From Schmidtea nova (taxonomy: Eukaryota): DNA of 64,000 nt. The DNA lies in assembly GCA_044892505.1 (NCBI GenBank), contig CM097882.1, forward strand, positions 148,738,001-148,802,000, written 5' to 3'. Positions within the stretch are counted from its first letter, which is position 1, and every line of letters starts with the position of its first letter. The notes under the pieces are model-generated. The model made no database searches. It worked only from the letters and a program-made list of their open reading frames with translations, and was not told where the DNA came from. The translations under genes were made by a program, and so were the position numbers. Of the stretch, positions 1,840 to 57,840 are shown piece after piece.

Positions 1840-2740
1840 ATTCTAGTAAGTGGTGATTCCTTGGTAGCAGCATTAAGTATTAAATAAATTAATAGATAAC
1901 AAAATAAGCCTTTGCTGCAAAATGTCTTTTATTAATGAAAAATCTTCGATTTTAAAATAATCCTCTTCAAATATAATTCGAAATATAAGTGGTATCTTCA
2001 TCCATTTCTACTGATTCTTTCTCGTGAATTATTTTTATTTTCATTGGATGTATATCCGATTAATATACATTTTATATTTTAAGATGTTTTTTGTTAAAAA
2101 TTTAAAAAACAAAATAAAAACTCTAAAATTTAAATTTTTCCGAACAAATATAAATTTTCTACGTTTTTTAAAAAGATCTTCTCAATTTCAAATAAAAAAA
2201 TTTTTTTTTTAATTTATCCGTTCTAAAATTAAAATTTTTCCCCTTTTATTGTCTGTATTCTATATTCTTATTTTTAACCTTTGATATTTGAATTTTAAAA
2301 TTAATTTAATTATATATCTCTTTGAAATACCCATATATTTTTTGTACTTTCTTTTTTCTTTACCTTTTCCTTTTTCTCTTTCTTCTTTGTAGAACAACAT
2401 GTTTTTAACAAGGTAATAAGTGGCTGATGCAGCTAACTTCCTCTTTAGAATTAAGTTTTGGGTGTTTGTCTCTAATGAAAATAGCTTCTTTCAGTCTGAG
2501 ATTTTTTTCATCATTTTCGCTTGTCAATATTCTCACTAATACTAAATTTTCTTTATTTTCTGTCTGACATTGGTGAAGATGTCAATATACAGATGACTTT
2601 CCACCAGGATCAAGATGTTCTTTAATTCTTTAATGTAAAGTTCGAAGAGTGCTTCCAATGTAAATTTCTTCGCATAATAAAAATGGTGAAATGCATTCAA
2701 TTTTCATTATTATCGATTTTTATAACTTTTTTGCTAAAAA
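1840..2740 (-). mobile_element. Penelope-like element (family A) 3' remnant: GIY-YIG endonuclease + pseudo-LTR
   Basis: Degenerate translation ...CEEIYIGSTLRTLH*RIKEH.../ILTSENDEKNLRLKEAIFIRDKHPKLNSKEE. The downstream sequence recurs at 58020-58500 and 8901-9056. Confidence 0.75.
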
Positions 2741-5000: not shown

Positions 5001-8000
5001 CTAGAAACACAAATAAATAACTAAAATTACTAAAAAATGTTTGTTCATTACAGAAATCTTAAATCCAATCTCTGACTTTTTATTCGCTTTACCTTCAGTA
5101 GTTCGTTTTCGGTGTCTATAAATAAACTTATAAAAATGATAACATTTTTAAAATTATCATCATTTAAAAAAAATAATATACATTCAAAATAAAAGCAGGT
5201 TTTTCAAGTAACCCAATTCTTTAAATTAGAAATTCTTGTGTTATCAAAACTTAAAAATTTCTCGAACTGTTTAAAGTAAGGCAAAGAAAATTTTCCTAGA
5301 TATTCAGAATATGAAAATAAAGCGAACAGTAATATTTTTGAAAGGTCATCTTTTTTTATATTGAATCTGCTATAACAGAAGAGTTAATAAAGTCGATCGC
5401 GTAATAATTGTTAGTCGATCCCCAAACATGTATAATAAGTGTTTTCTTACTGCATTTTTAAAAAAGCAATTTCTTAAGCAAAGTTTTAGAAAAAGGAGAT
5501 TACGGAGACTTTTTATTGATAAAAGTAGAATTTATGTAAAAATTAGTTAACATCTTTGTATCATAAACATGAAATTTGTTTGTGACACTCATGTGAGAGT
5601 TTTTGTGGTCTGTTAGGAAATAATTGAAAATAGTTTTTTCTCTATTTGAAGTTTGACGGTATGCTTAAATCATGATATATTTGTTTTTTGTTGTCCCCTG
5701 ATCCTGACTGCATGTTACTAATAAGTATGTGTGCACGGAGTTAAATATGTTAATTTAAATGCATTTTTATTATAACGGTCACACAACATTGATATAGAAT
5801 TTGTTGAAATATAAAATAGCGTTATTTAATATTTTGCAAAACTTAGATTATTATAAATATTTTTCTAGTGAAATATTCATTATCAAGTTCAAAATGGTTT
5901 TGTGAATAAAAATCTATTAAACCTTAATGGTGACGGTGTAATCTGGAGTCTGAGAATTCATCACGAACAATTACTTCATAACAGTCTAAAATCTCTAATA
6001 GTTTTAGATGTCAAACTTATTTTATATTTTTAATTATTCAAACTAATAATATTAAAACTGAAAAGTAAATAAAAATAAAAATTTATCTAAAATAAAAAAT
6101 ACTCATTATCTATCACTAATCATCGCGGCTTTGAAATTTGATAATATTTGTACGAAAAGCAACATTGTTGTATTTATTTTATGTAAAATATACCGGAAGA
6201 AATTATTTCATGGTCGTTAAAGTCAACTTTTACAAGTTAACACGTTTGAGTATTTCAGACATTCAACCTTTTTGTGAATAATCAACATATCTTTTCCATG
6301 AGGATTTCATAAACCTTTTCAAATATTACATACAATGACATAGGTAGTAGAACATATTTGTCAAGAGGTCACATTTTCGAAATTTTAACTCAAACGAATT
6401 CGAACATTGTATACGTTTTTCTTATAATGTATAAAACCCAACAAAAGCAAAAGAAAATTTCGTTACAAAGCGTCGGCGCGAAAGGATTTAATTTTATTTT
6501 GTTTTGAACAATTGTTTGAATAATGGCCATATACTTTATCAGACCATTTTGGTCGTAACGTTCCACAAAAATAAGACAAATATACCAAAAGATATGGATT
6601 TTTCTCGTGTAAAAATTCGAACTCTGAGTGGTAGAAAATGTAAAAAATTAACTAATTAATACAGTTTTCAAAACTTAGTAGGTCTTTTGGCACGGCACCA
6701 TGAACCAAAATGAGAAATGCACTAATATCGTACTGTAAATGGGTTTCATATCAAATTTATTAATAATTTTCATTTTATAATTTTTAATCAGTTTACAATA
6801 AGATAGTTAACAAAAATTAAATAATGTAAGAAATACTTTGTGAAATAAAATTTCCACAGGCAAACTATGACAATTAGAATTAAAATGCAGCCTGCCAAAA
6901 CAATAAGACATCCGATTATTATATATTTTACCGCTAATTTTGAGTTTTGTTCAGCTATGAATTCTNNNNNNNNNNNNNNNNNNNNNNNNNNNNNNNNNNN
7001 NNNNNNNNNNNNNNNNNNNNNNNNNNNNNNNNNNNNNNNNNNNNNNNNNNNNNNNNNNNNNNNNNNNNNNNNNNNNNNNNNNNNNNNNNNNNNNNNNNNN
7101 NNNNNNNNNNNNNNNNNNNNNNNNNNNNNNNNNNNNNNNNNNNNNNNNNNNNNNNNNNNNNNNNNNNNNNNNNNNNNNNNNNNNNNNNNNNNNNNNNNNN
7201 NNNNNNNNNNNNNNNNNNNNNNNNNNNNNNNNNNNNNNNNNNNNNNNNNNNNNNNNNNNNNNNNNNNNNNNNNNNNNNNNNNNNNNNNNNNNNNNNNNNN
7301 NNNNNNNNNNNNNNNNNNNNNNNNNNNNNNNNNNNNNNNNNNNNNNNNNNNNNNNNNNNNNNNNNNNNNNNNNNNNNNNNNNNNNNNNNNNNNNNNNNNN
7401 NNNNNNNNNNNNNNNNNNNNNNNNNNNNNNNNNNNNNNNNNNNNNNNNNNNNNNNNNNNNNNNNNNNNNNNNNNNNNNNNNNNNNNNNNNNNNNNNNNNN
7501 NNNNNNNNNNNNNNNNNNNNNNNNNNNNNNNNNNNNNNNNNNNNNNNNNNNNNNNNNNNNNNNNNNNNNNNNNNNATAACATTTTACATAGGAAGGATAT
7601 TCTTCACTATGATAGTTATGCAAATTTATTTTCTAATTACATTTTTTAATTAGCTTATTGTTATTTATGCAGTAAGTCGTCTGTATTTGTATTATTTATA
7701 AAATTATTGAAACTTTCAGTAATAAATATTATCGTAAAGTAATTGATTTTCACGGATTTTATAAAATGTATGATAAAAAAATAAATATTCAATGAGTAAC
7801 TAAAAATTTTACTTTATTTTTATTAATAATAATTTTGTAGACTCTTATTAAGCTTACCACATGTCCCGATTTCACAGGAATTGTTCCGCCGTCCAAATCA
7901 ATTTGAAATCTTGTCCTTGTTTTAATTAGAGTTTACTTAAAATTAACTTTTTCTGTTAGAAAGTGAGACTTTTTCACAGACAATAATATCAAAACTTTGG

Positions 8001-11000
8001 TAGTCATATTCTATTTGTGAAAAAACAAGTTCTATGCTTTGAATTACATTTCTTATGTTTTTTAAATATATTTGGATCAACAAATTTTGTAATGACGCCT
8101 GTCCCTGGCTGCAGGCTTTATTGCAAACAAATAGGGAAGCTTGTTCATTTTATAAAGGTCAGTGGTTGCAGTGGTCATTTATAAATTTCAATTTACTGTC
8201 CCTTTTGAAAAGACTTTGCAAAATTGCCAAAAAACTCGAAAATGATTACCTTTTTCTGAAATAAGCTCTATTTGGCAATGTAAAATGTTAGTAATATTTT
8301 GCGCAGTTCTCTGTGATTAATGGATAAATAAAATATTACACGTTCTTTAAAATATCAAAACCCCAATACAATATTTGCTTTTACTGCAAAATTGTCAAAA
8401 CTAAATACATACAAAAAGGTCGAAAACAACTGAAATGTACTAAAAAAATCATTGTTCATTTTCGTACAATTCTTCATGACTTTGGTTTCAATAAATTTGA
8501 CTGTCTGTCAAAATCTATCTCAAAACTCTTTAAATCAAAATTGCATTTTGAACGAACAAGGTATAAAAATCTAATGAAAAAATCTAGCTGGCTAAAAATT
8601 TAGTCAGAGTAAACCTTTGGAAATTTTCTATGCAAGCTTCGAACTGAAATGATGTTAGTAGAGGGATATGAGGGCATGAGAACAAAGACACACCGAGGAC
8701 GGGTAAACAAAAGTATTCTGAGTCATGATATGACTCATCATTTATCTAGAACAAAGGCAACAAGTCATGCGATGACTCATCGGATGTGTCATACATTTAT
8801 AGAACAAAGGCATAGAGTTATGCTTTTTAGAACAAAAACCATGGTCATCATCAAAAAAAATTCTAAGTTACTTTAAACAAAGAACTTTTAAGAGTATAAA
8901 ATGGTGATTCCTTGGTAGCAGCATTAAGTATTAAATTAATTAATAAATAAGTAACAAAATAAGTAACAAATTAAGCCTTTGCTGCAAAAATAATTTTATT
9001 AAGTGAGAAAATTATTTTTGCAGCAAAGGCTTATTTTGTTACTTATTTATTAATTAAAAGAACTTTTATTTAGACAAAGTAAACCTTTCAAAAATAAGTT
9101 TTAAATATTATTTTTTATATTATTTGCCACCCTGATAATTCCTCTTCTACTTCCTTATCAATATTTATATTTTTTTCCAACGAAAACTTTAGAGTATCAA
9201 AGTGAATGTTACATAATTTAATATATAATTTCAAATATTCTTGTTCAAATGTTCTTGTAGTAATGATATAAAAACGTCATTGAATTTTTTATTAAAAATT
9301 TTTAAATATTTAAAATAAGGAATTAAAATCATTAGCTGAAATTCCACAGAGACTCTCAGGCAATTTATAGTTGAGAAATTTTTAAAATAGTAAAATTCAT
9401 GATTTTTGGAAATAACTTTAAAGTTGAAAGAATTATATAGAAATATATTTTATAAAATAAAAATATTCATCCAGTGAAGGGTTGAATTTATTTAAAATAA
9501 TATATATTACCATTAATGGGTGTTTTCATATAGTATCTGTTTTCACAGTTATTGCCAAAAAAGTTCAAAAAACATCTTAAAAAAATTTACAACCATCAAT
9601 AAAATAATATTATGTAATTATTTTTCTTACTCGCAGTATGTCGTTTGAGTTGTATAATTTTTAAGAAATATTCCTTGATTATTGCAATATTTTTTATCCA
9701 TGTATTTTAATCTTTCCACTAAGTTATATGAAACTGAAAAAAAATCTTTAAAAACCAAAAATATAAACATTTATTTACCTGTTTTGGAAACGTCGACACA
9801 AGTCGGTCCCGCAAATCCTTTATTACACCTGGAAATTACACAAATAATATTTTCATTATGAAAATTATACCAAAAGAAATTAAATAATTTATTATTTATG
9901 TCAAATGGTGATCAAATAGTGAATACATTTGATACAAATAAATATCACAAATTCCTAGATAGAAAATTTCAAATAAATGAAAATTAGAATAGAATATTCA
10001 ATTACTTCGATAAACTTTGATAAAAATTGTTTTAGACATTCGCAATTGAAATAAACAATTACCAAATATTGAGCATTGATTTATTTTTATAATGTTAACA
10101 TTTTTATATAAACATTAATTGATATCAATAATTCCCATAATGGTAAGACTATAGATCAAATTTTTTTAACAAGTACACAATATTCCGGCACAGCCTTTAT
10201 CAAGTGTGTATTTGGTAATACACAATTGATAAAGGCTGTGCTTAAATAATGTGACTTTTAATATAATGATTACACATGGAACCGGTAATTCGAGTATAAA
10301 ATTACAAATTATAAAAATTACATTTACTTTGTAAGATTAATATAAAAAGTATTTTTAGTTGAGAATTCACCAAAACAAAAACAATTGAAAAATGAAAAAC
10401 AACAACAAAAATAAAACTCATTAAAGGATAATAATTGTCAATAAATATTTTGGAAAAAAACATTTGTCGAATGACTTATTTGTTTTTAACAAGTAAAGCT
10501 TGTGATTTTTTGTGATACCCAGTGCAAATCCCCAATAGCAGACTAGTTTCGAGCTTTTGGCTCTCATCAGTGCAATGCAGAATACGAGAAAATTTCTCTC
10601 CGCGCCTAGTAAGTATAAAACAAAGTCAAAAGATTTTTGTTATATACTATACCTGGTACACTGGATAACAAAAATATATATAATAAAAATCTTTCAACTT
10701 TGTTTTATACTTACCAGGCGCGGAGAGAAATTTTCTCGTCTTCTGCATAGCACTGATGAGAGCCAAAAGCTCGAAACTAGTCTGCTATTGGGGATTTGCA
10801 CTGGGTATCACAAAAAATCACAAGATTTACTTGTTAAAAACAAATAAGTCATTCGACAAATGTTTTTTTATTTAATACAGGAGTGTACAACCCGCAGCCC
10901 GAGGCACTCTTATATTTATAATCATGTTTTTTGTTGTTCGTTCATTATATGTTTTCTTTTTATATCTAGTTTCCCCCTCAAATTTACCATTGAAAAATTT

Positions 11001-14000
11001 GATAAGTACAAAGTTATTTGTAAAGCCAGTAAAAATAATAAGTAGGAAATTTTCCAATAATTCCTACTTATGCGCGGCCTTTGGTGCAATTTTAGTTGGC
11101 CAGCCCTGATTTAAGATATCGGAAAAGGAAATTTTTACCAAATAGTTCCAATTAATGAACCAATAAAACTGATGTCAATAATGATTTAAAACTTTTAAAT
11201 GATAGAGTTTATTGACTTAATTAATGAAGAAAACAATTTTATTTAGTATTTGTAAGAATAATTAAATAAAAATACTATTTAATTTTCAGTTTTAAATATA
11301 TTTAAGTACTATAATAAAATTAGATAATAAAATTATAAATTAGCATAATAAATTAAATATAAATATTGAATTATTAATTGGTGTAGGGGTTGCAACTTTC
11401 ATTGCAGATACCTCTAAAACAAAATTAAACAAGAAATATTCAATACACATTTATTTAAAAAAATATCTTCTTTTCTGAGTTTTCCAATTTTTTTGCGTTT
11501 ATAAATTTCTTGCGTTTGGGATTTCAAATCAATTATAAATTTCTTGTGTTTTGGATTTCAAATTTATTGTAAATTTCTTGCGTTTGGATTTCAAATTAGT
11601 TGTAAATTGCTTGCGTTTGGATTTCAAATTAGTTGTAAATTGTTTGCGTTTGGATTTCAAATTTATTGTAAATTGCTTGCGTTTTAATTTCAAATCGGAT
11701 CTCTTTTTCTTCTTTTAAACAAACTTTTTTATATATAAATATCTCTCTTTTTATTTAATATAGTTATGTAAATATAATGTATTAAATTAGTTAAAATATA
11801 AATAAATATATATATGACGGAGGCACTACAATTGGCTTGACTGTAAATTTCACATTTAAGAATGTTTGAAAATTAAAATATAAAATATTTATTGAATGCT
11901 TGTGTGTGAATATTCCCTATTCAATTTATAACTCATGCTTGTAAAAATATTAAATATGAAAAAGCAATTGTTTTAATAAATTTGTGTTGTGTTTAAAAAT
12001 ATCGTTTTTTGAAATTTTGATATGTTCGTAATCTAATAAACCAAACAAATAACATTATTTATAAAATTTTAATGATAAATCTTAGAATTTATTTCAAAAT
12101 TGGCAATTTCGTTTGATTCTAATCATCAATTTTGCAAATTGAGTAAGGTCGTATTTGCAAGATATATAACGAATTTCATTTTAATAATTTAAAAAAATAA
12201 TGAGTAACTTTATCATACTGCTTTTATAAATTTGGATTATGTAAAAAACAATTATTTTCTTTCAAAATATCTGAAAAGACTTTTCAATTTAATTATGACA
12301 TTAATTTAATAATTAAATTATTAATTTAGTATTATATTAAATAAACTTTTTTTCTTTTTGTTTTAAATAAGCAAATAAACGCACTTTTTCACTTTCAAAA
12401 ATAACCAACATGACGAACATGCTCCAAGAAGAATTTACAATTATCAAATCAAAATCGGAAATAAAATCTAATGAAATATTTTCAAATCCTGACGTTGTGA
12501 CGAATCAGAGATCTATGGAAATTCCGAGTGAAAAGAAGCTATCTTAATCCAATACTAATACTTATAAACTATCGGATTGTGTCAGTAACAATCGTCAGTC
12601 ATTGAATACGGGAATTCTTTCATCTTCATTTCAGTTATGTCCTCCGCCTGGAAGAGCAATAGCTCATTTACTCCAACAATTTGAAAACAATCCCCAATAT
12701 TTCTCATTGCTAACATTTCTAATGAGTCTTTGATTTTCAGTGTCTGCAATATGAGAGGTTAATGAGTTTTCCGATGTCGGTCCAATTGATGACAATCAGA
12801 CCCAGCAATCGTTTATGCATAGTGAAACCAATAATGAATTCAACCAAAACCATCGAATCCCGAACAAAATATGTGTAACGTGCAAACAATACCGAATCCA
12901 AGCACAATTAATCAAAGTCAACAAGTTATGCTGTAAAAAACTAGCGATTACGGAAGCCAAGCAATGCATTCATCAACTATAGTAGATTGGAATATAATGC
13001 ATTATGTTCTTAATCTTTTCCTTTTTCTACAACCCGCTGTAGTTTTAATATAAACAGCTGAATTTTTAAATTAAAAAAATTATCATAAATTAACCTTTTT
13101 AAACCTTTTTATAATATTATAATGTTGTAGCTTATATTTCTTAACAAATGTCATATTTTAATTAAATTTTAACTTTGACAATATATGTCGATTCTTTGAC
13201 GAGATATGACCATTTGAGCCAGCCACCGCTTCTTAAAGAAATTTTCACAAACTTTTTAAATTTATCATACTACAAAGATAAATAATTTCAAAGCCCATTT
13301 CCATCCAAACAAAGTACCATATCGAAAACATATTATCTGATAAAAATGTATTAGTATTGTTTTATTATTCCAAATCACTAAATGTTTGTTTCGTACGGCG
13401 TCCGGTTCTTGGTGTGAGGAGAGTCAGCAAAATTTCTTTTCAAAACTTTTGAAAAATATCTTGACTTTAACAGTGCATTTTTGTCGTGGTGGATATTATT
13501 GAAACAAGATACGTGTCTAATTGTAGCCCCACTCACGCTCTGTCGTATGAATAATCATTTACTTGCCATCACGATAAAAATGAAGAGAGAATAAATGTAA
13601 TTTTCAAAATTATATTTTTTAAAAATTTAATTTTTCCTGATTTTTTTAAAATTTTATTATTTTTAAATTAAATGGATTTTCTTAAAGTAGGAAAATAAAA
13701 ATAAAAATTACATAAAAATTCAATGAATAACAATGGGATAACAATTGATTACAATTTAAGTGATTTTCCAGTGATTTTCTAGAAATTTATTGACTGAAAA
13801 TTTCTTGTTTATATTAATTTATTTTCGGGGCCGAAATTAAATTACCATATTTAATCAAGTAAATAATATTGAAAAAATTGTCAAATAAAATTTATTCGAA
13901 TTGAATTTACCGACAAAATTTGGAGATTTTTTCTGATTTATCTTGATAACATTTTCCGTTGCCGTTGCAAAACTTTTCATCATTTGGTGAACACGAACTT

Positions 14001-14585
14001 ATCGGTGATTCCATTATTTTTCCCACTTAAATTGATTAAAACAAATTAATAAAACAATTAAATAAAAAACATTTAAAACAATTCAATTCAATAATAGATT
14101 TGCTATATTTACAATTAATTAAAGCCCTTTATAAATTCCCTAACTGATCCGTATAAACAATAATAAAATTAAAACTCGTCTAGCAAATGTCTTATTAAAA
14201 TATTTTCTTTTGTTGCTTTTGAAAACTTTCGAAATTTCTTTCATTTTTCACTTACTAATAATTAATTTAAATTGTATACATTTAAAATTTAGACATCTTT
14301 CATTCAATTATTTCGTGGATTGATATTTAGTTTAATAATTAATCCGGACGCAGAATTCTATAATAGAATTTCTTTAAGTTATTAAATAAAAATAATCAAT
14401 TTACTCTCATTAAATAATGTAATTGAATATTAAATTAATTATTTAATTTTGTAATTGAATATTAAATTAATTATTTAATTTTGATCTTCAAAGTACATAA
14501 TTTGTAGATCAATTATTAAATTTTTAATATATAAAGATTAAATATTAATATAAAGGTAAAAACGATAAGAGTTGATTTCATATAA

Positions 14586-14651
<66 letters not shown>

Positions 14652-17600
14652 TGTAGAGTAAATATAAACATGAAATCAATGATTTATGGGAGGCTTTAGA
14701 ATCTCAATCGATTAATTTGGTATTATTGGCTATTGCAAATAATAAATTATTTACTGAAAACAAAAATTCTTATTCTTTATATTCTTCTTATTATTTTTGG
14801 GCTGGCGAAATCGAAAATAAAGTTTGTTTGAATTTATCAAAAATTAAGTATATACAAAAAGGAACAAGTTTAAAAAACGTACGATAAAGCATTAAGCAGT
14901 AAACTAGCGCAAAAGAAAATGAAACAGTAAAATACAAATATTTTTGAGTTAAATTTTTTTTTCATTAGTTTCGGTCTATTTAATTGTTAGTAAACCATCA
15001 TAACCTCCTTTAGTACTCCATATGCTCCAGTGGTTTTAATGCAGAAATTGGCAGTACACACAGTAAGATTACATGGCTGAGGCATTACTCTATTCTCTCC
15101 GCCATAGACTAACTTTTCCAACCAATAAAAGTGTTTTATTGAATCACAAGCATAACAATGAAGACCATGTATTTTTAGAATTATAGCAATTAAAAAGCTA
15201 ATTAGAATCCAAAAACAGTTACAATACATAATAATTTCAAAAAATAGTAATATTTGATAATTATAAATCACAATTTTAAATCCAAAAAGTTTCTAATAAA
15301 ACAAAGTAATTGCGTCAAACAAACGCACATAAATGTCCAATTATAGTAATTTCTTTTAATTTCTTTTTTAAAAAACTTTTAAAAGTAATTAATTAGAAAA
15401 TGTCGTTATAACAATTAAAAATATAACAATGTCGTTAATAACAAAAATATATCAATGTCGTTACAGTTAGGAAATGAGATAAAAAGTAGAATTGAGACGT
15501 TCTTTCAAATGATACATTTTAATAATTGTGGATTTGATTTATTAAATTGGAATTGGGAATTAATTAAGTCGTTCATATCGTATTTAACTAAATTTAATTA
15601 ATAAATTTGTTTGTTTTGCTCTCTTCTTTCCACAACTGAATTAAGATTTAACAAGTTCCTATTTCATTGAAACATAGTGTTGTTCTGATAACTTGTTCCC
15701 AGACAGAAGTCAATTTTTAGACCACTACATCAGCCCCCATCGGAAGATGCAGAGCGCATTTTAAAATACTATATCTCCGCGGAAAAATCGATAAGGGCTC
15801 GTCCCGACGGTCTAAAGACCCTACGGGCGCTAAATGGACTCTCGTCCTGACTTCCTTCGGGAAGTTAGGCGATGCGGCGTACTTGAACCGAATTTTAGAC
15901 GGGAAAAAAAGGGGAATGCAAGGATTATTCATCGTTTTGGTGAATTATTTTTGAATGAATAAAAGTAGTCAGGAGCATTTTTGATTTAGTATACAATGGT
16001 TTGAAGATGAATAAGAATAGATAGAAGCATTTTGAATATTGATGTATCGTTTTTAAAGATGAATAAAGGTAGATTTTTATTAGCAAGGAATAATAGATAA
16101 TTGAGACGTGGAATAGAGATCGACATGGGATAGTCGGGGGTGATAGATAAGTAAGAGATATTTCATGCGATAGGACCGAAAAGTATGCAGATGCGCAAGT
16201 CCTTCTAGCAGCAGCAAAAACCCGAAAGAGAGAATTTAATGAGGAGTAGTTACGACAACTGATCTCACCTGCTCTCTAAATTCTCGCCATTATGTAAAGT
16301 ACCAGCATAGTTACTTGGGTAATAACTAGGGGTACAAGTGTGCGAGGGATTGATATTTATGTGGCGGTGTGGGTTGTATTAAGCCCTAGAAATCGGTAAT
16401 AAGTTTTTTTTTAAATACACATACCACCCCACNNNNNNNNNNNNNNNNNNNNNNNNNNNNNNNNNNNNNNNNNNNNNNNNNNNNNNNNNNNNNNNNNNNN
16501 NNNNNNNNNNNNNNNNNNNNNNNNNNNNNNNNNNNNNNNNNNNNNNNNNNNNNNNNNNNNNNNNNNNNNNNNNNNNNNNNNNNNNNNNNNNNNNNNNNNN
16601 NNNNNNNNNNNNNNNNNNNNNNNNNNNNNNNNNNNNNNNNNNNNNNNNNNNNNNNNNNNNNNNNNNNNNNNNNNNNNNNNNNNNNNNNNNNNNNNNNNNN
16701 NNNNNNNNNNNNNNNNNNNNNNNNNNNNNNNNNNNNNNNNNNNNNNNNNNNNNNNNNNNNNNNNNNNNNNNNNNNNNNNNNNNNNNNNNNNNNNNNNNNN
16801 NNNNNNNNNNNNNNNNNNNNNNNNNNNNNNNNNNNNNNNNNNNNNNNNNNACTGCGCAATATATTTCGAGAACTTAATTCTTTTCATCAGCTGCTACTCA
16901 ATCTTCCATTCAAATATAAATCAAATAAAATGATTTACGAAACAAATTAATAATAATTTTTATAATGAAATGCATATTATAAATTTTATAAAATAGCCAA
17001 AGAATTTAAAACAATAAAATCTTTTTTAAAAAAAAAATAAATTAATCTTAAAAATATAATATTTTCTTATTTATAAAAAAAATATTTTTTTAAGAATATT
17101 TTCATATTTATAAACAACAGAATGATTGAAAACAAAATCCATAATCCCCAATTGAAAATGCTCTAATACTCGACTACAGAAAAGACGGTTAGTCTTCTCC
17201 AAAGTATGTGACATTTCGTCCATGACATTTGAAATATTAAACGAGTATAGAACACAAATCAAAAGAAAAAAATAAACATCATCAACAATCACATCTAAAT
17301 GTATAGAGTTTTATATTGCTATATTAGTATTTCGATTTAATGATGAGGTTTACATTCGTGATGATTATTTCTCTTATTCTATTATTTATGAATTAATTTG
17401 TGTGACTGTTGGCGATTCTAAGTTTTCTGTATTGCTTAGTCAATTAATGGGATTTAGCGTTGTTTTCAGTCATATCGATGTTTGTAAATATGTGAGTGTG
17501 AGAATTTTGAGTGCGTGTGTTTGTCTCAATTTTGCGGTTTGAGTAAATTAACTGATGTGATTGTTGATGATATTTATTTTTTTCTTTTGATTTGTGTTCT

Positions 17601-57472: not shown

Positions 57473-57840
57473 ATGGGCGGTGTGTACAAAGGTCATTGAC
57501 GTAATCAGTGCAAGCTAGTGACTTGCGCTTACTAGGAATTTCTCGTTCAAGTGGAATAATTTCAATCCACTATTCCTGACACGACAGTGATTTAGCAGGT
57601 TACCCGGCCATTTCTAGCTAGGAATTAAACTCATTGTAACTGCCATTGTAGCACGCGTGCGGCCCCGGACATCTAAGGGCATTGCAGACCTGTTATTGCT
57701 CAATTTCAGTTAGTTAAACGCCATTTATTCCCTAAGAAGTCAGCATTTGCGTTAGAACACAAATGTACAATTTAGCAAGTTAGTCTCGTTCATTAACGGA
57801 ATTAACCAGACAAATCGCTCCACCAACTAAAACGGTCAAT
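57473..57840 (-). rRNA. 18S: 18S rRNA gene fragment (3' part, pseudogenic)
   Basis: Reverse complement contains TTAGTTGGTGGAGCGATTTGTCTGGTTAATTCCG, GCAATAACAGGTCTG, CCCTTAGATGTCCGGGGCCGCACG and TTTGTACACACCGCCC, with substitutions in conserved positions. Confidence 0.95.

What the first reader, a model, noticed from the sequence alone, without database searches (positions are those of the whole stretch)
10454..10869. 415-bp hairpin carrying two outward-facing minimal hammerhead ribozymes
Each arm has a complete CUGAUGA/GAAA core, a GUC site and a palindromic helix III (ACUAGU), the form known from Penelope-like elements to cleave as dimers. The arms are about 97% identical. Read-through from either side gives a ~185-bp duplex that buries each ribozyme in its own antisense, a possible switch between cleavage and dsRNA/siRNA production. 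No Penelope ORF is attached here.
Basis: partly seen in the sequence, partly recalled or inferred. Interest (0 to 1): 0.75.

Follow-up and report, generated by a model that had tools for sequence, protein, structure and literature searches.

The report
Head-to-head twin hammerhead retrozyme insertion
The 416-bp hairpin is real, but it is one ordinary copy of a very abundant short ribozyme-carrying retroelement, laid down as two truncated copies joined head to head, as Penelope-like retrotransposons are already known to do, and nothing shows a purpose-built RNA switch.

Summary
There are two 193-nt arms (10454-10646 and 10677-10869) that are 96% complementary. Each carries CUGAUGA/GAAA/GUC with the palindrome ACUAGU, facing outward. 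The left ribozyme has a U.U mismatch in helix I.

The arms are the 3' halves of a ~380-nt non-coding repeat with at least 1,513 first-look candidate matches in this 1.25-Gb genome. This repeat has a fixed 3' end that usually abuts (TAA)n or (TA)n microsatellites. Its 5' ends are variable, it forms partial tandems and arrays, and it has an optional 20-45-nt tail.

In an unselected sample, 10 of 28 insertions have an inverted, 5'-truncated partner abutting the 5' end; none is tail-to-tail. The window's two arms are truncated at different points (unit positions 166 and 187). They share four rare variants that no other sampled copy combines, and have since diverged by 8 substitutions. I read this as one old twin insertion that has decayed since.

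All of this matches the published Penelope-like-element insertion signature and the non-LTR retrozyme class. Intact RT+GIY-YIG Penelope-like elements with the same architecture and target abound in the genome, but I found no sequence-level parent. Each transcript strand holds a single ribozyme with no partner in cis, so cleavage is unlikely. This scan has met the same family and the same twin arrangement before in this genome.

The parts
10448..10668 (-). Copy A: 5'-truncated copy of the ~380-nt hammerhead repeat (unit positions about 166-380). Its 3' end (T-run plus CCAAAAT) points left.
   Evidence: blastn to a natural unit (L015): unit 166-378 = window 10668-10456, 92%. The 3'-end motif is read (L001 row).
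10669..10675 (.). 7-nt junction between the two 5'-truncated heads. Together with 10665-10668 it repeats an 11-nt piece of the element (ATAACAAAAAT), which suggests microhomology or template switching.
   Evidence: Coordinates; sequence read. The mechanism is inference.
10676..10869 (+). Copy B: 5'-truncated copy of the same repeat (unit positions about 187-380). Its 3' end (T-run) points right.
   Evidence: blastn: unit 187-378 = window 10676-10867, 92%. The arm matches other genomic copies at 94-96%.
10747..10788 (+). Hammerhead motif of copy B: helix I 6 bp, CUGAUGA, helix II 4 bp, GAAA, ACUAGU, and the cleavage site 3' of 10782.
   Evidence: weak Rfam HH9 hit at 10735-10804, 24.1 bits.
10535..10576 (-). 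Hammerhead motif of copy A: identical core, but with a U.U mismatch in helix I (10574). The cleavage site would be 3' of 10541 on the minus strand.
   Evidence: weak Rfam HH9 hit at 10518-10587, 19.6 bits.

Best explanation
The hairpin is a fossil 'twin' insertion of a non-autonomous, ~380-nt hammerhead-carrying retroelement (an animal non-LTR retrozyme). It was most likely mobilised by the reverse transcriptase/GIY-YIG endonuclease of Penelope-like elements (PLEs). Proposed steps, all inferred from anatomy plus published biochemistry: the PLE protein cuts both strands of an AT-rich target; each exposed 3'-OH primes reverse transcription at the fixed start site near the 3' end of a retrozyme RNA; the two cDNAs stop early, at unit positions 166 and 187; and their heads are joined through a few bases of microhomology. 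This leaves two copies head to head with both 3' ends, and therefore both ribozymes, facing outward. The pair has since drifted neutrally by about 2% per arm. The hammerhead serves the family's life cycle at tandem loci, where it processes multimeric transcripts. In this copy each strand has one lone ribozyme with no cis partner for the helix-III dimer. Any read-through RNA should therefore fold into the ~200-bp duplex and not cleave. At most it is an incidental dsRNA source.
For: The arm is a repeat: at least 1,513 first-look candidates, and the 40 scored are 94-97% identical (38 of them full-length arms). The unit period is 380 nt, with a shared 3' end and variable 5' ends. The 3' ends abut (TAA)n, (ATT)n or (TA)n in most copies. 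In the unselected sample L003-L030, 10 of 28 loci have an abutting inverted partner at the 5' end and none is tail-to-tail. Junction gaps are mostly -6 to +25 nt. 18 of 73 copies lack the last 20-45 nt, and 13 copies are 388-433 nt, i.e. one unit plus a short tail. The window arms share A227, T247, T253 and T364, which no other sampled copy combines. Their identity to each other is 0.958, above the maximum of 0.953 to 54 other copies. Their private differences include a CpG decayed to TG on one arm and CA on the other. The genome holds at least 3,406 GIY-YIG candidates. One is an intact 856-aa ORF with RVT_1 plus a C-terminal GIY-YIG domain, arranged in tandem and head-to-head, ending in (TTA)n, with a hammerhead-like motif about 110 nt from its 3' end. 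Literature: PLE insertions are 5'-truncated and form partial tandems, often have an inverted 5'-truncated copy at the 5' end, carry a 30-40-bp tail and favour microsatellites (PMC8557442). Purified PLE protein cleaves and extends both DNA strands and starts reverse transcription internally (PMC11167929). Non-LTR retrozymes of 170-400 nt are reported in platyhelminths among other phyla, with PLEs as the suspected mobilisers (PMC7229834; bioRxiv 10.64898/2026.07.22.740005).
Against: No sequence-level autonomous parent was found: 31 PLE loci share nothing with the 380-nt unit. Mobilisation by PLEs therefore rests on the insertion signature, the shared target and co-occurrence. No target-site duplication is recognisable at the window copy, and the site is not an obvious microsatellite. 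Only about 70 of the thousands of copies were sampled.
Confidence: 0.85

Rival explanations
1. A functional ribozyme/dsRNA switch: the locus is kept because transcripts either self-cleave through the outward hammerheads or fold into a Dicer substrate.
For: The hairpin is extremely stable and both cores are intact. siRNAs map to inverted Penelope copies in transformed Drosophila (PMC3681739).
Against: The arrangement is generic for the family (10 of 28 loci). The arms carry 7-8 uncompensated differences, one of them inside helix I of a ribozyme. There is only one sense ribozyme per strand, so the required dimer cannot form in cis. PLE-type hammerheads cleave poorly even as dimers in vitro (PMC4209133), and no reads end at the ribozyme site in Anolis RNA-seq (PMC11167929).
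Confidence: 0.05
2. Two independent insertions that happened to land next to each other in opposite orientation.
For: The family prefers particular AT-rich or microsatellite targets, so insertions cluster. Arm-to-arm identity (96%) is only slightly above family background (93-95%).
Against: The arms share four rare variants that no other sampled copy combines. The heads abut within 7 nt. Head-to-head pairs occur in 36% of sampled loci, with no abutting tail-to-tail pairs, which independent hits would not produce. Other twins are 99.4-99.6% identical between arms (L004, L057).
Confidence: 0.05
3. A post-insertion inverted duplication (replication template switch) or an assembly artefact that created a palindrome from one copy.
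For: Palindromes are a known artefact of missed adapters in long-read data, and PLE structures are known to trouble assemblies (PMC8557442).
Against: Both arms end at the element's own 3' terminus and do not carry flanking DNA into the repeat. The arms differ in length (221 against 194 nt) and at 7-8 sites, which an artefact would not produce. The same structure recurs at many loci.
Confidence: 0.03
4. A MITE or foldback DNA transposon whose terminal inverted repeats happen to contain hammerhead motifs.
For: Long terminal inverted repeats with a short centre resemble foldback elements.
Against: Most family copies are single-armed, 5'-truncated or tandem. There is no target-site duplication. 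The 'termini' are the 3' end of a retroelement that abuts microsatellites. The inner ends of the arms are variable truncation points.
Confidence: 0.02

Closest known systems
Non-LTR retrozymes of animals (Cervera & de la Pena 2020, PMC7229834; Li, Clavereau & Pollet 2026 preprint, 10.64898/2026.07.22.740005)
   Same: A non-coding ~380-nt unit (GC 35%, longest open frame 68 aa) with one type-I hammerhead whose helix III is 2 bp plus a palindromic loop. Tandem arrays exist elsewhere in the genome (L038, L057-L059). It co-exists with PLEs.
   Different: The window copy is neither a tandem nor a full unit: it is two 3' halves in inverted orientation. The papers I read do not mention inverted pairs for retrozymes (0 occurrences of 'inverted' in PMC7229834). 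Circular RNA was not tested here. Insertions end 87 nt downstream of the ribozyme site, not at it.
Penelope-like element insertion architecture (Craig et al. 2021, PMC8557442; Frangieh et al. 2024, PMC11167929)
   Same: 5' truncation, partial tandems, an inverted 5'-truncated copy abutting the 5' end, an optional 30-40-bp tail, a microsatellite bias, and a hammerhead near the repeat end.
   Different: There is no RT/GIY-YIG ORF, and no sequence similarity to the sampled autonomous PLEs of this genome.
Penelope inverted copies as siRNA sources in Drosophila (Evgen'ev 2013 review, PMC3681739)
   Same: Inverted PLE-derived repeats that can give dsRNA.
   Different: Those are kilobase rearranged copies of an autonomous element, with measured siRNAs. 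Here the hairpin is 416 bp, non-autonomous and without RNA data.
Hammerhead satellites and SINE-like elements (newt satellite 2, Schistosoma Sm-alpha; from general knowledge and as cited in PMC4209133 and PMC7229834)
   Same: An abundant short repeat with a type-I hammerhead that needs a dimer for helix III.
   Different: The sequence is different, and those elements are described as tandem or dispersed, not as head-to-head twins.

Membership tests
Hammerhead ribozyme, type I animal form with short palindromic helix III | Conserved core C3-U-G-A-N-G-A9 ... G12-A-A-A15.1 ... U16.1-H17 | tested here: met
   CUGAUGA, GAAA and GUC are present on both arms. In about 80 family copies the core varies less than the rest of the unit (0.8% against 3.4% per site, Mann-Whitney p = 0.002).
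Hammerhead ribozyme, type I animal form with short palindromic helix III | Helix I (~6 bp) and helix II (~4 bp, G10.1-C11.1) can pair; helix III is 1-2 bp with a 2-4-nt palindromic loop | tested here: met
   Right arm: 6-bp helix I, 4-bp helix II, ACUAGU. Left arm: the same, but with a U.U mismatch in helix I at 10574. The feature list is from PMC4209133.
Hammerhead ribozyme, type I animal form with short palindromic helix III | Reaches the gathering score of an Rfam hammerhead model | tested here: not met
   The best hit is Hammerhead_HH9 at 24.1 and 19.6 bits against a gathering score of 52, and there is no hit at gathering threshold. This is the expected outcome for variants with almost no helix III, so it weakens the call only slightly.
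Hammerhead ribozyme, type I animal form with short palindromic helix III | Self-cleavage at the predicted site | not testable with these tools
   This needs in vitro transcription or RNA-end mapping.
Non-LTR retrozyme | Non-coding unit of ~170-400 nt with a type-I hammerhead, low GC, and no LTR, PBS or PPT | tested here: met
   The unit is 378-380 nt with GC 35% and a longest open frame of 68 aa. PBS and PPT were not searched for specifically.
Non-LTR retrozyme | Occurs as tandem head-to-tail copies | tested here: met
   This holds for the family: arrays of 1.3 to 2.8 kb (L038, L057-L059) and many copies of 1.02-1.6 units. It does not hold for the window copy, which is an inverted pair of partial units.
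Non-LTR retrozyme | Expressed as linear and circular monomer RNA | not testable with these tools
Penelope-like element (autonomous) | ORF with RT and GIY-YIG endonuclease | tested here: not met
   There is no PLE ORF in or beside the hairpin; the only window hit is a fragment at 2408-2719. Intact PLE ORFs exist elsewhere. The hairpin is therefore not itself a PLE.
PLE-type insertion signature (works like) | Fixed 3' end, 5' truncation, partial tandem, inverted 5'-truncated partner at the 5' end, optional 30-40-bp tail, microsatellite targets | tested here: met
   for the family. The window copy shows the inverted 5'-truncated pair with both tails present; its target is AT-rich but not a clear microsatellite.
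MITE / foldback DNA transposon | Terminal inverted repeats with fixed ends, flanked by a target-site duplication, in most copies | tested here: not met
   Most copies are single-armed or tandem, and no duplication is seen at the window flanks.
Hairpin-RNA (endo-siRNA) locus | A long inverted repeat that is transcribed and yields small RNAs | tested here: inconclusive
   The fold is very stable. No RNA data could be laid on it, and the genome has no relatives available for a conservation test (header).

The most novel reading that the evidence does not exclude
About one third of the insertions of this several-thousand-copy retrozyme family are born as head-to-head hairpins. The family may therefore be a built-in, genome-wide generator of dsRNA against itself and its Penelope-like helpers, so that twin insertion would couple transposition to its own small-RNA silencing. 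This locus would be one such source. A minus-strand host gene with EGF-like exons may read through it: candidate exons lie at 9774-9911 and 13910-14026, though Pfam does not support them.
Probability: 0.12. Interest if true: 0.45.

Novelty: new member of a known kind. Interest (0 to 1): 0.2.

Why it matters
As a single locus it matters little: it is an old, decaying copy of a repeat, and its structure is explained by published Penelope-like-element biology. The family-level data have some value. They show a non-autonomous hammerhead retrozyme carrying the full PLE insertion signature: twin head-to-head copies, the tail, and microsatellite targets. Its insertions end 87 nt downstream of the ribozyme cut site. 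This supports the current proposal that animal retrozymes are mobilised by PLEs. It also argues that reverse transcription starts at an internal site on an uncleaved, multimeric or circular template. Finally, it warns annotators that such hairpins are insertion by-products and not microRNA-like genes; Rfam plant microRNA models hit this hairpin below threshold.

Tried and rejected
1. Rfam at gathering threshold found no ribozyme. At E-value threshold it gave only weak HH9 hits, plus spurious long-hairpin matches to plant MIR families and an Enterococcus sRNA. I rejected those as generic hairpin scoring.

2. ViennaRNA does not predict the hammerhead fold for monomer or dimer. This is uninformative, because the core is not nearest-neighbour driven.

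3. Search for the autonomous parent. Thirty GIY-YIG loci and one 10-kb PLE cluster showed no similarity to the unit and no CUGAUGA-type hammerhead. The PLE 3' UTR holds only a variant motif, read by eye.

There is therefore no test of the assembly by long reads, of transcription, of cleavage ends or of small RNAs.

5. No convincing target-site duplication was found at the window flanks.

6. Pfam on candidate EGF-like exons around the hairpin returned nothing, so the intronic location is unproven.

7. I considered and rejected the idea that the two arms come from different subfamilies. The variants T226 and T260 in the left arm are not linked in other copies.

8. The masked N stretches in the window were left untouched.

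Full report
**Observation.** The arms are 10454-10646 and 10677-10869, 193 nt each and 96% complementary. The 30-nt string from CTGATGA to GAAACTAGTC occurs only at 10753-10782 (+) and 10541-10570 (-), with none expected by chance.

Read off the sequence, the right arm has:
- a 6-bp helix I (10747-10752 with 10783-10788);
- the CUGAUGA box;
- a 4-bp helix II closed by G10.1-C11.1;
- GAAA;
- the palindrome ACUAGU (10776-10781);
- a GUC site that would be cut 3' of 10782.

The left arm mirrors this on the minus strand, except for an A-to-U change at 10574 that puts a U.U mismatch in the middle of helix I. Helix III would be 2 bp closed by a 2-nt loop. It cannot form alone, but it can form 6 bp between two copies. 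This is the published description of animal type-I and fly/mosquito Penelope-associated hammerheads (PMC4209133). Rfam supports the call only weakly (HH9, 24.1 and 19.6 bits, gathering score 52). The whole stretch folds as one hairpin of -307.9 kcal/mol.

**What the arms are.** The arm is a repeat. A search of the window's own 1.25-Gb genome gave 1,513 first-look candidates, and the 40 scored were 94-97% identical, 38 of them over the full arm. Aligning 28 independent loci shows a unit of about 380 nt: L015 holds 1.63 units with period 380. Copies share one 3' end, a T-run followed by CAAAA. In most loci this runs straight into (TAA)n, (ATT)n or (TA)n. They start at variable points upstream, which is 5' truncation.

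Further family features:
- 13 of 55 complete-3'-end copies are 388-433 nt, one unit plus a 10-50-nt terminal redundancy.
- 18 of 73 copies lack the last 20-45 nt.
- Arrays of 1.3-2.8 kb exist (L038, L057-L059).
- The unit is non-coding, with a longest open frame of 68 aa and GC 35%.
- The hammerhead core varies less among copies than the rest of the unit (0.8% against 3.4% per site, p = 0.002).

**Anatomy of the window copy.** Against a natural unit, the minus-strand copy covers unit positions 166-380 (window 10668 down to about 10448, including a CCAAAAT end). The plus-strand copy covers 187-380 (10676-10869). Only 7 nt lie between them. The 'loop' is therefore mostly element sequence, and the two heads are truncated at different points. 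Both 3' ends face outward, which is why both ribozymes do.

**One event or two?** The arms share four states (A227, T247, T253, T364) that are rare in about 80 other copies and that no other copy combines. They are more similar to each other (0.958) than either is to any of 54 other copies (maximum 0.953). They differ at 7 sites within the 193-nt arms, and at 8 over the 192 nt aligned to the unit. One of these is a CpG that has decayed to TG on one arm and CA on the other, and there is no compensation that would preserve pairing. I conclude they are sister copies from one event that have drifted about 2% each since.

**How common the arrangement is.** In the unselected sample L003-L030, 10 of 28 loci have an inverted, 5'-truncated partner abutting the 5' end, and none has an abutting tail-to-tail partner. 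Junction gaps are mostly -6 to +25 nt. In young twins the arms are 99.4-99.6% identical (L004, L057). At L057 two multi-unit arrays meet head to head. With roughly one copy per several hundred kilobases, chance adjacency cannot explain this. It is a property of the insertion mechanism.

[quoted passage not shown] A biochemical basis exists. Purified Poseidon protein cleaves and extends both top and bottom strands, unlike R2 or L1. It also initiates reverse transcription at two internal sites whose spacing equals the tail (PMC11167929). Priming on both strands predicts two copies with 3' ends outward and heads joined, which is the window's structure.

The genome is rich in such elements:
- at least 3,406 GIY-YIG candidates, many in opposed pairs;
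- ORFs that end just after the GIY-YIG domain;

I found no sequence similarity between the 380-nt unit and 31 sampled PLE loci. The helper is therefore inferred from signature, shared target and co-occurrence, not from a shared tail. Three of 56 family loci have PLE ORF fragments within 1.5 kb. At L025 a PLE fragment is joined through 15 nt of filler to the 5' end of a retrozyme copy on the same strand. That could be a template-switch chimera or a nested insertion.

**Function of this copy.** What is shown is the structure and its origin. What follows is inferred. A plus-strand transcript contains antisense ribozyme sequence first and one sense ribozyme second; a minus-strand transcript is the mirror image. 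Neither contains two sense ribozymes, so the helix-III dimer cannot form in cis, and the sense ribozyme would be made in the presence of its perfect antisense. PLE-type hammerheads cleave poorly even as dimers in vitro (PMC4209133), and no RNA-seq ends were seen at the Anolis PLE site (PMC11167929). The likely RNA product of read-through is therefore a ~200-bp duplex.

**Comparison and novelty.** The element fits the non-LTR retrozyme class, which is reported in platyhelminths among other phyla with PLEs as the suspected mobilisers (PMC7229834; preprint 10.64898/2026.07.22.740005). It shows the PLE insertion signature. It is not itself a PLE (no ORF), a MITE (no fixed inner ends, no target-site duplication) or a microRNA gene (Rfam MIR hits are far below threshold).

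The retrozyme paper I read does not mention inverted pairs, so the twin frequency of 10 in 28 is a modest addition. So is the fact that insertions end 87 nt past the ribozyme site, which argues against a cleaved linear monomer primed at its 3' end.

Earlier notes of this scan on the same genome reached the same reading on other DNA: a 382-nt retrozyme with Penelope-style insertion (s1-411042) and head-to-head twins in an (ATT)n microsatellite (s1-381105). I re-derived both points independently here. Those notes also call the organism a flatworm. I did not verify that; the window has GC 27.5% and the genome has three giant contigs.

**Verdict.** This is an ordinary, aged twin insertion of an abundant retrozyme. 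Interest is low at the locus level and moderate at the family level.

Noticed in passing
window 10707-10719 (+) and 10616-10604 (-): Each arm carries a near-copy of the first 13 bases of U1 snRNA (ATACTTACCTGGC, recalled from general knowledge), with 1 and 2 mismatches. The intact 13-mer is visible in other family copies (L015 and L025 printouts). Earlier scan notes flagged this.
   Followed up: partly
window 2408-2719 (-): A fragment of a Penelope-like element ORF: its last 100 aa, the GIY-YIG region, 77% identical to the 856-aa ORF of L091.
   Followed up: partly
L025:1499-2802 (-): A PLE ORF fragment with an internal deletion is joined through a 15-nt T-rich filler to the 5' end of a 1.12-unit retrozyme copy on the same strand, which ends in (ATT)n. 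It may be a template-switch chimera of PLE and retrozyme RNAs, or a nested insertion.
   Followed up: partly
L091:2372-6697 (-) and 6696-10000 (+): A cluster of near-identical (99.9%) PLE copies in tandem and head-to-head, with an intact 856-aa RT+GIY-YIG ORF. The 3' end abuts (TTA)n. A hammerhead-like motif with UUGACGA in place of CUGAUGA lies about 110 nt from the 3' end.
   Followed up: partly
L057-L059 (G000:C2:193.889-193.894 Mb): Arrays of at least 2.8 kb of the 380-nt unit. At L057 a minus-strand array meets a plus-strand array head to head, and the copies abutting the junction are 99.4% identical over 171 nt.
   Followed up: partly
Family-wide: Copy lengths cluster at 388-433 nt (one unit plus 10-50 nt), and 18 of 73 copies stop 20-45 nt short of the 3' end. 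This looks like the PLE 'tail' and two reverse-transcription start sites, possibly one turn around a circular template.
   Followed up: partly
window 11499-11714: About six tandem copies of a 33-34-nt AT-rich unit. It is unrelated to the retrozyme.
   Followed up: no
window 57545-57838 (-): Two fragments matching eukaryotic SSU rRNA (model positions 1285-1604; 77.5 and 71.3 bits), apparently an isolated rDNA fragment or pseudogene.
   Followed up: no
window 10176-10253: A second small inverted repeat (37-nt arms, 86% complementary, 4-nt loop) just upstream of the hairpin.
   Followed up: no
window 9774-9911 (-), 13910-14026 (-), 14990-15292 (-): Cysteine-rich open frames on the minus strand that look like EGF-like or other cysteine-rich exons. 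If they belong to one gene, the hairpin is intronic. Pfam gave no hit on the fragments.
   Followed up: partly
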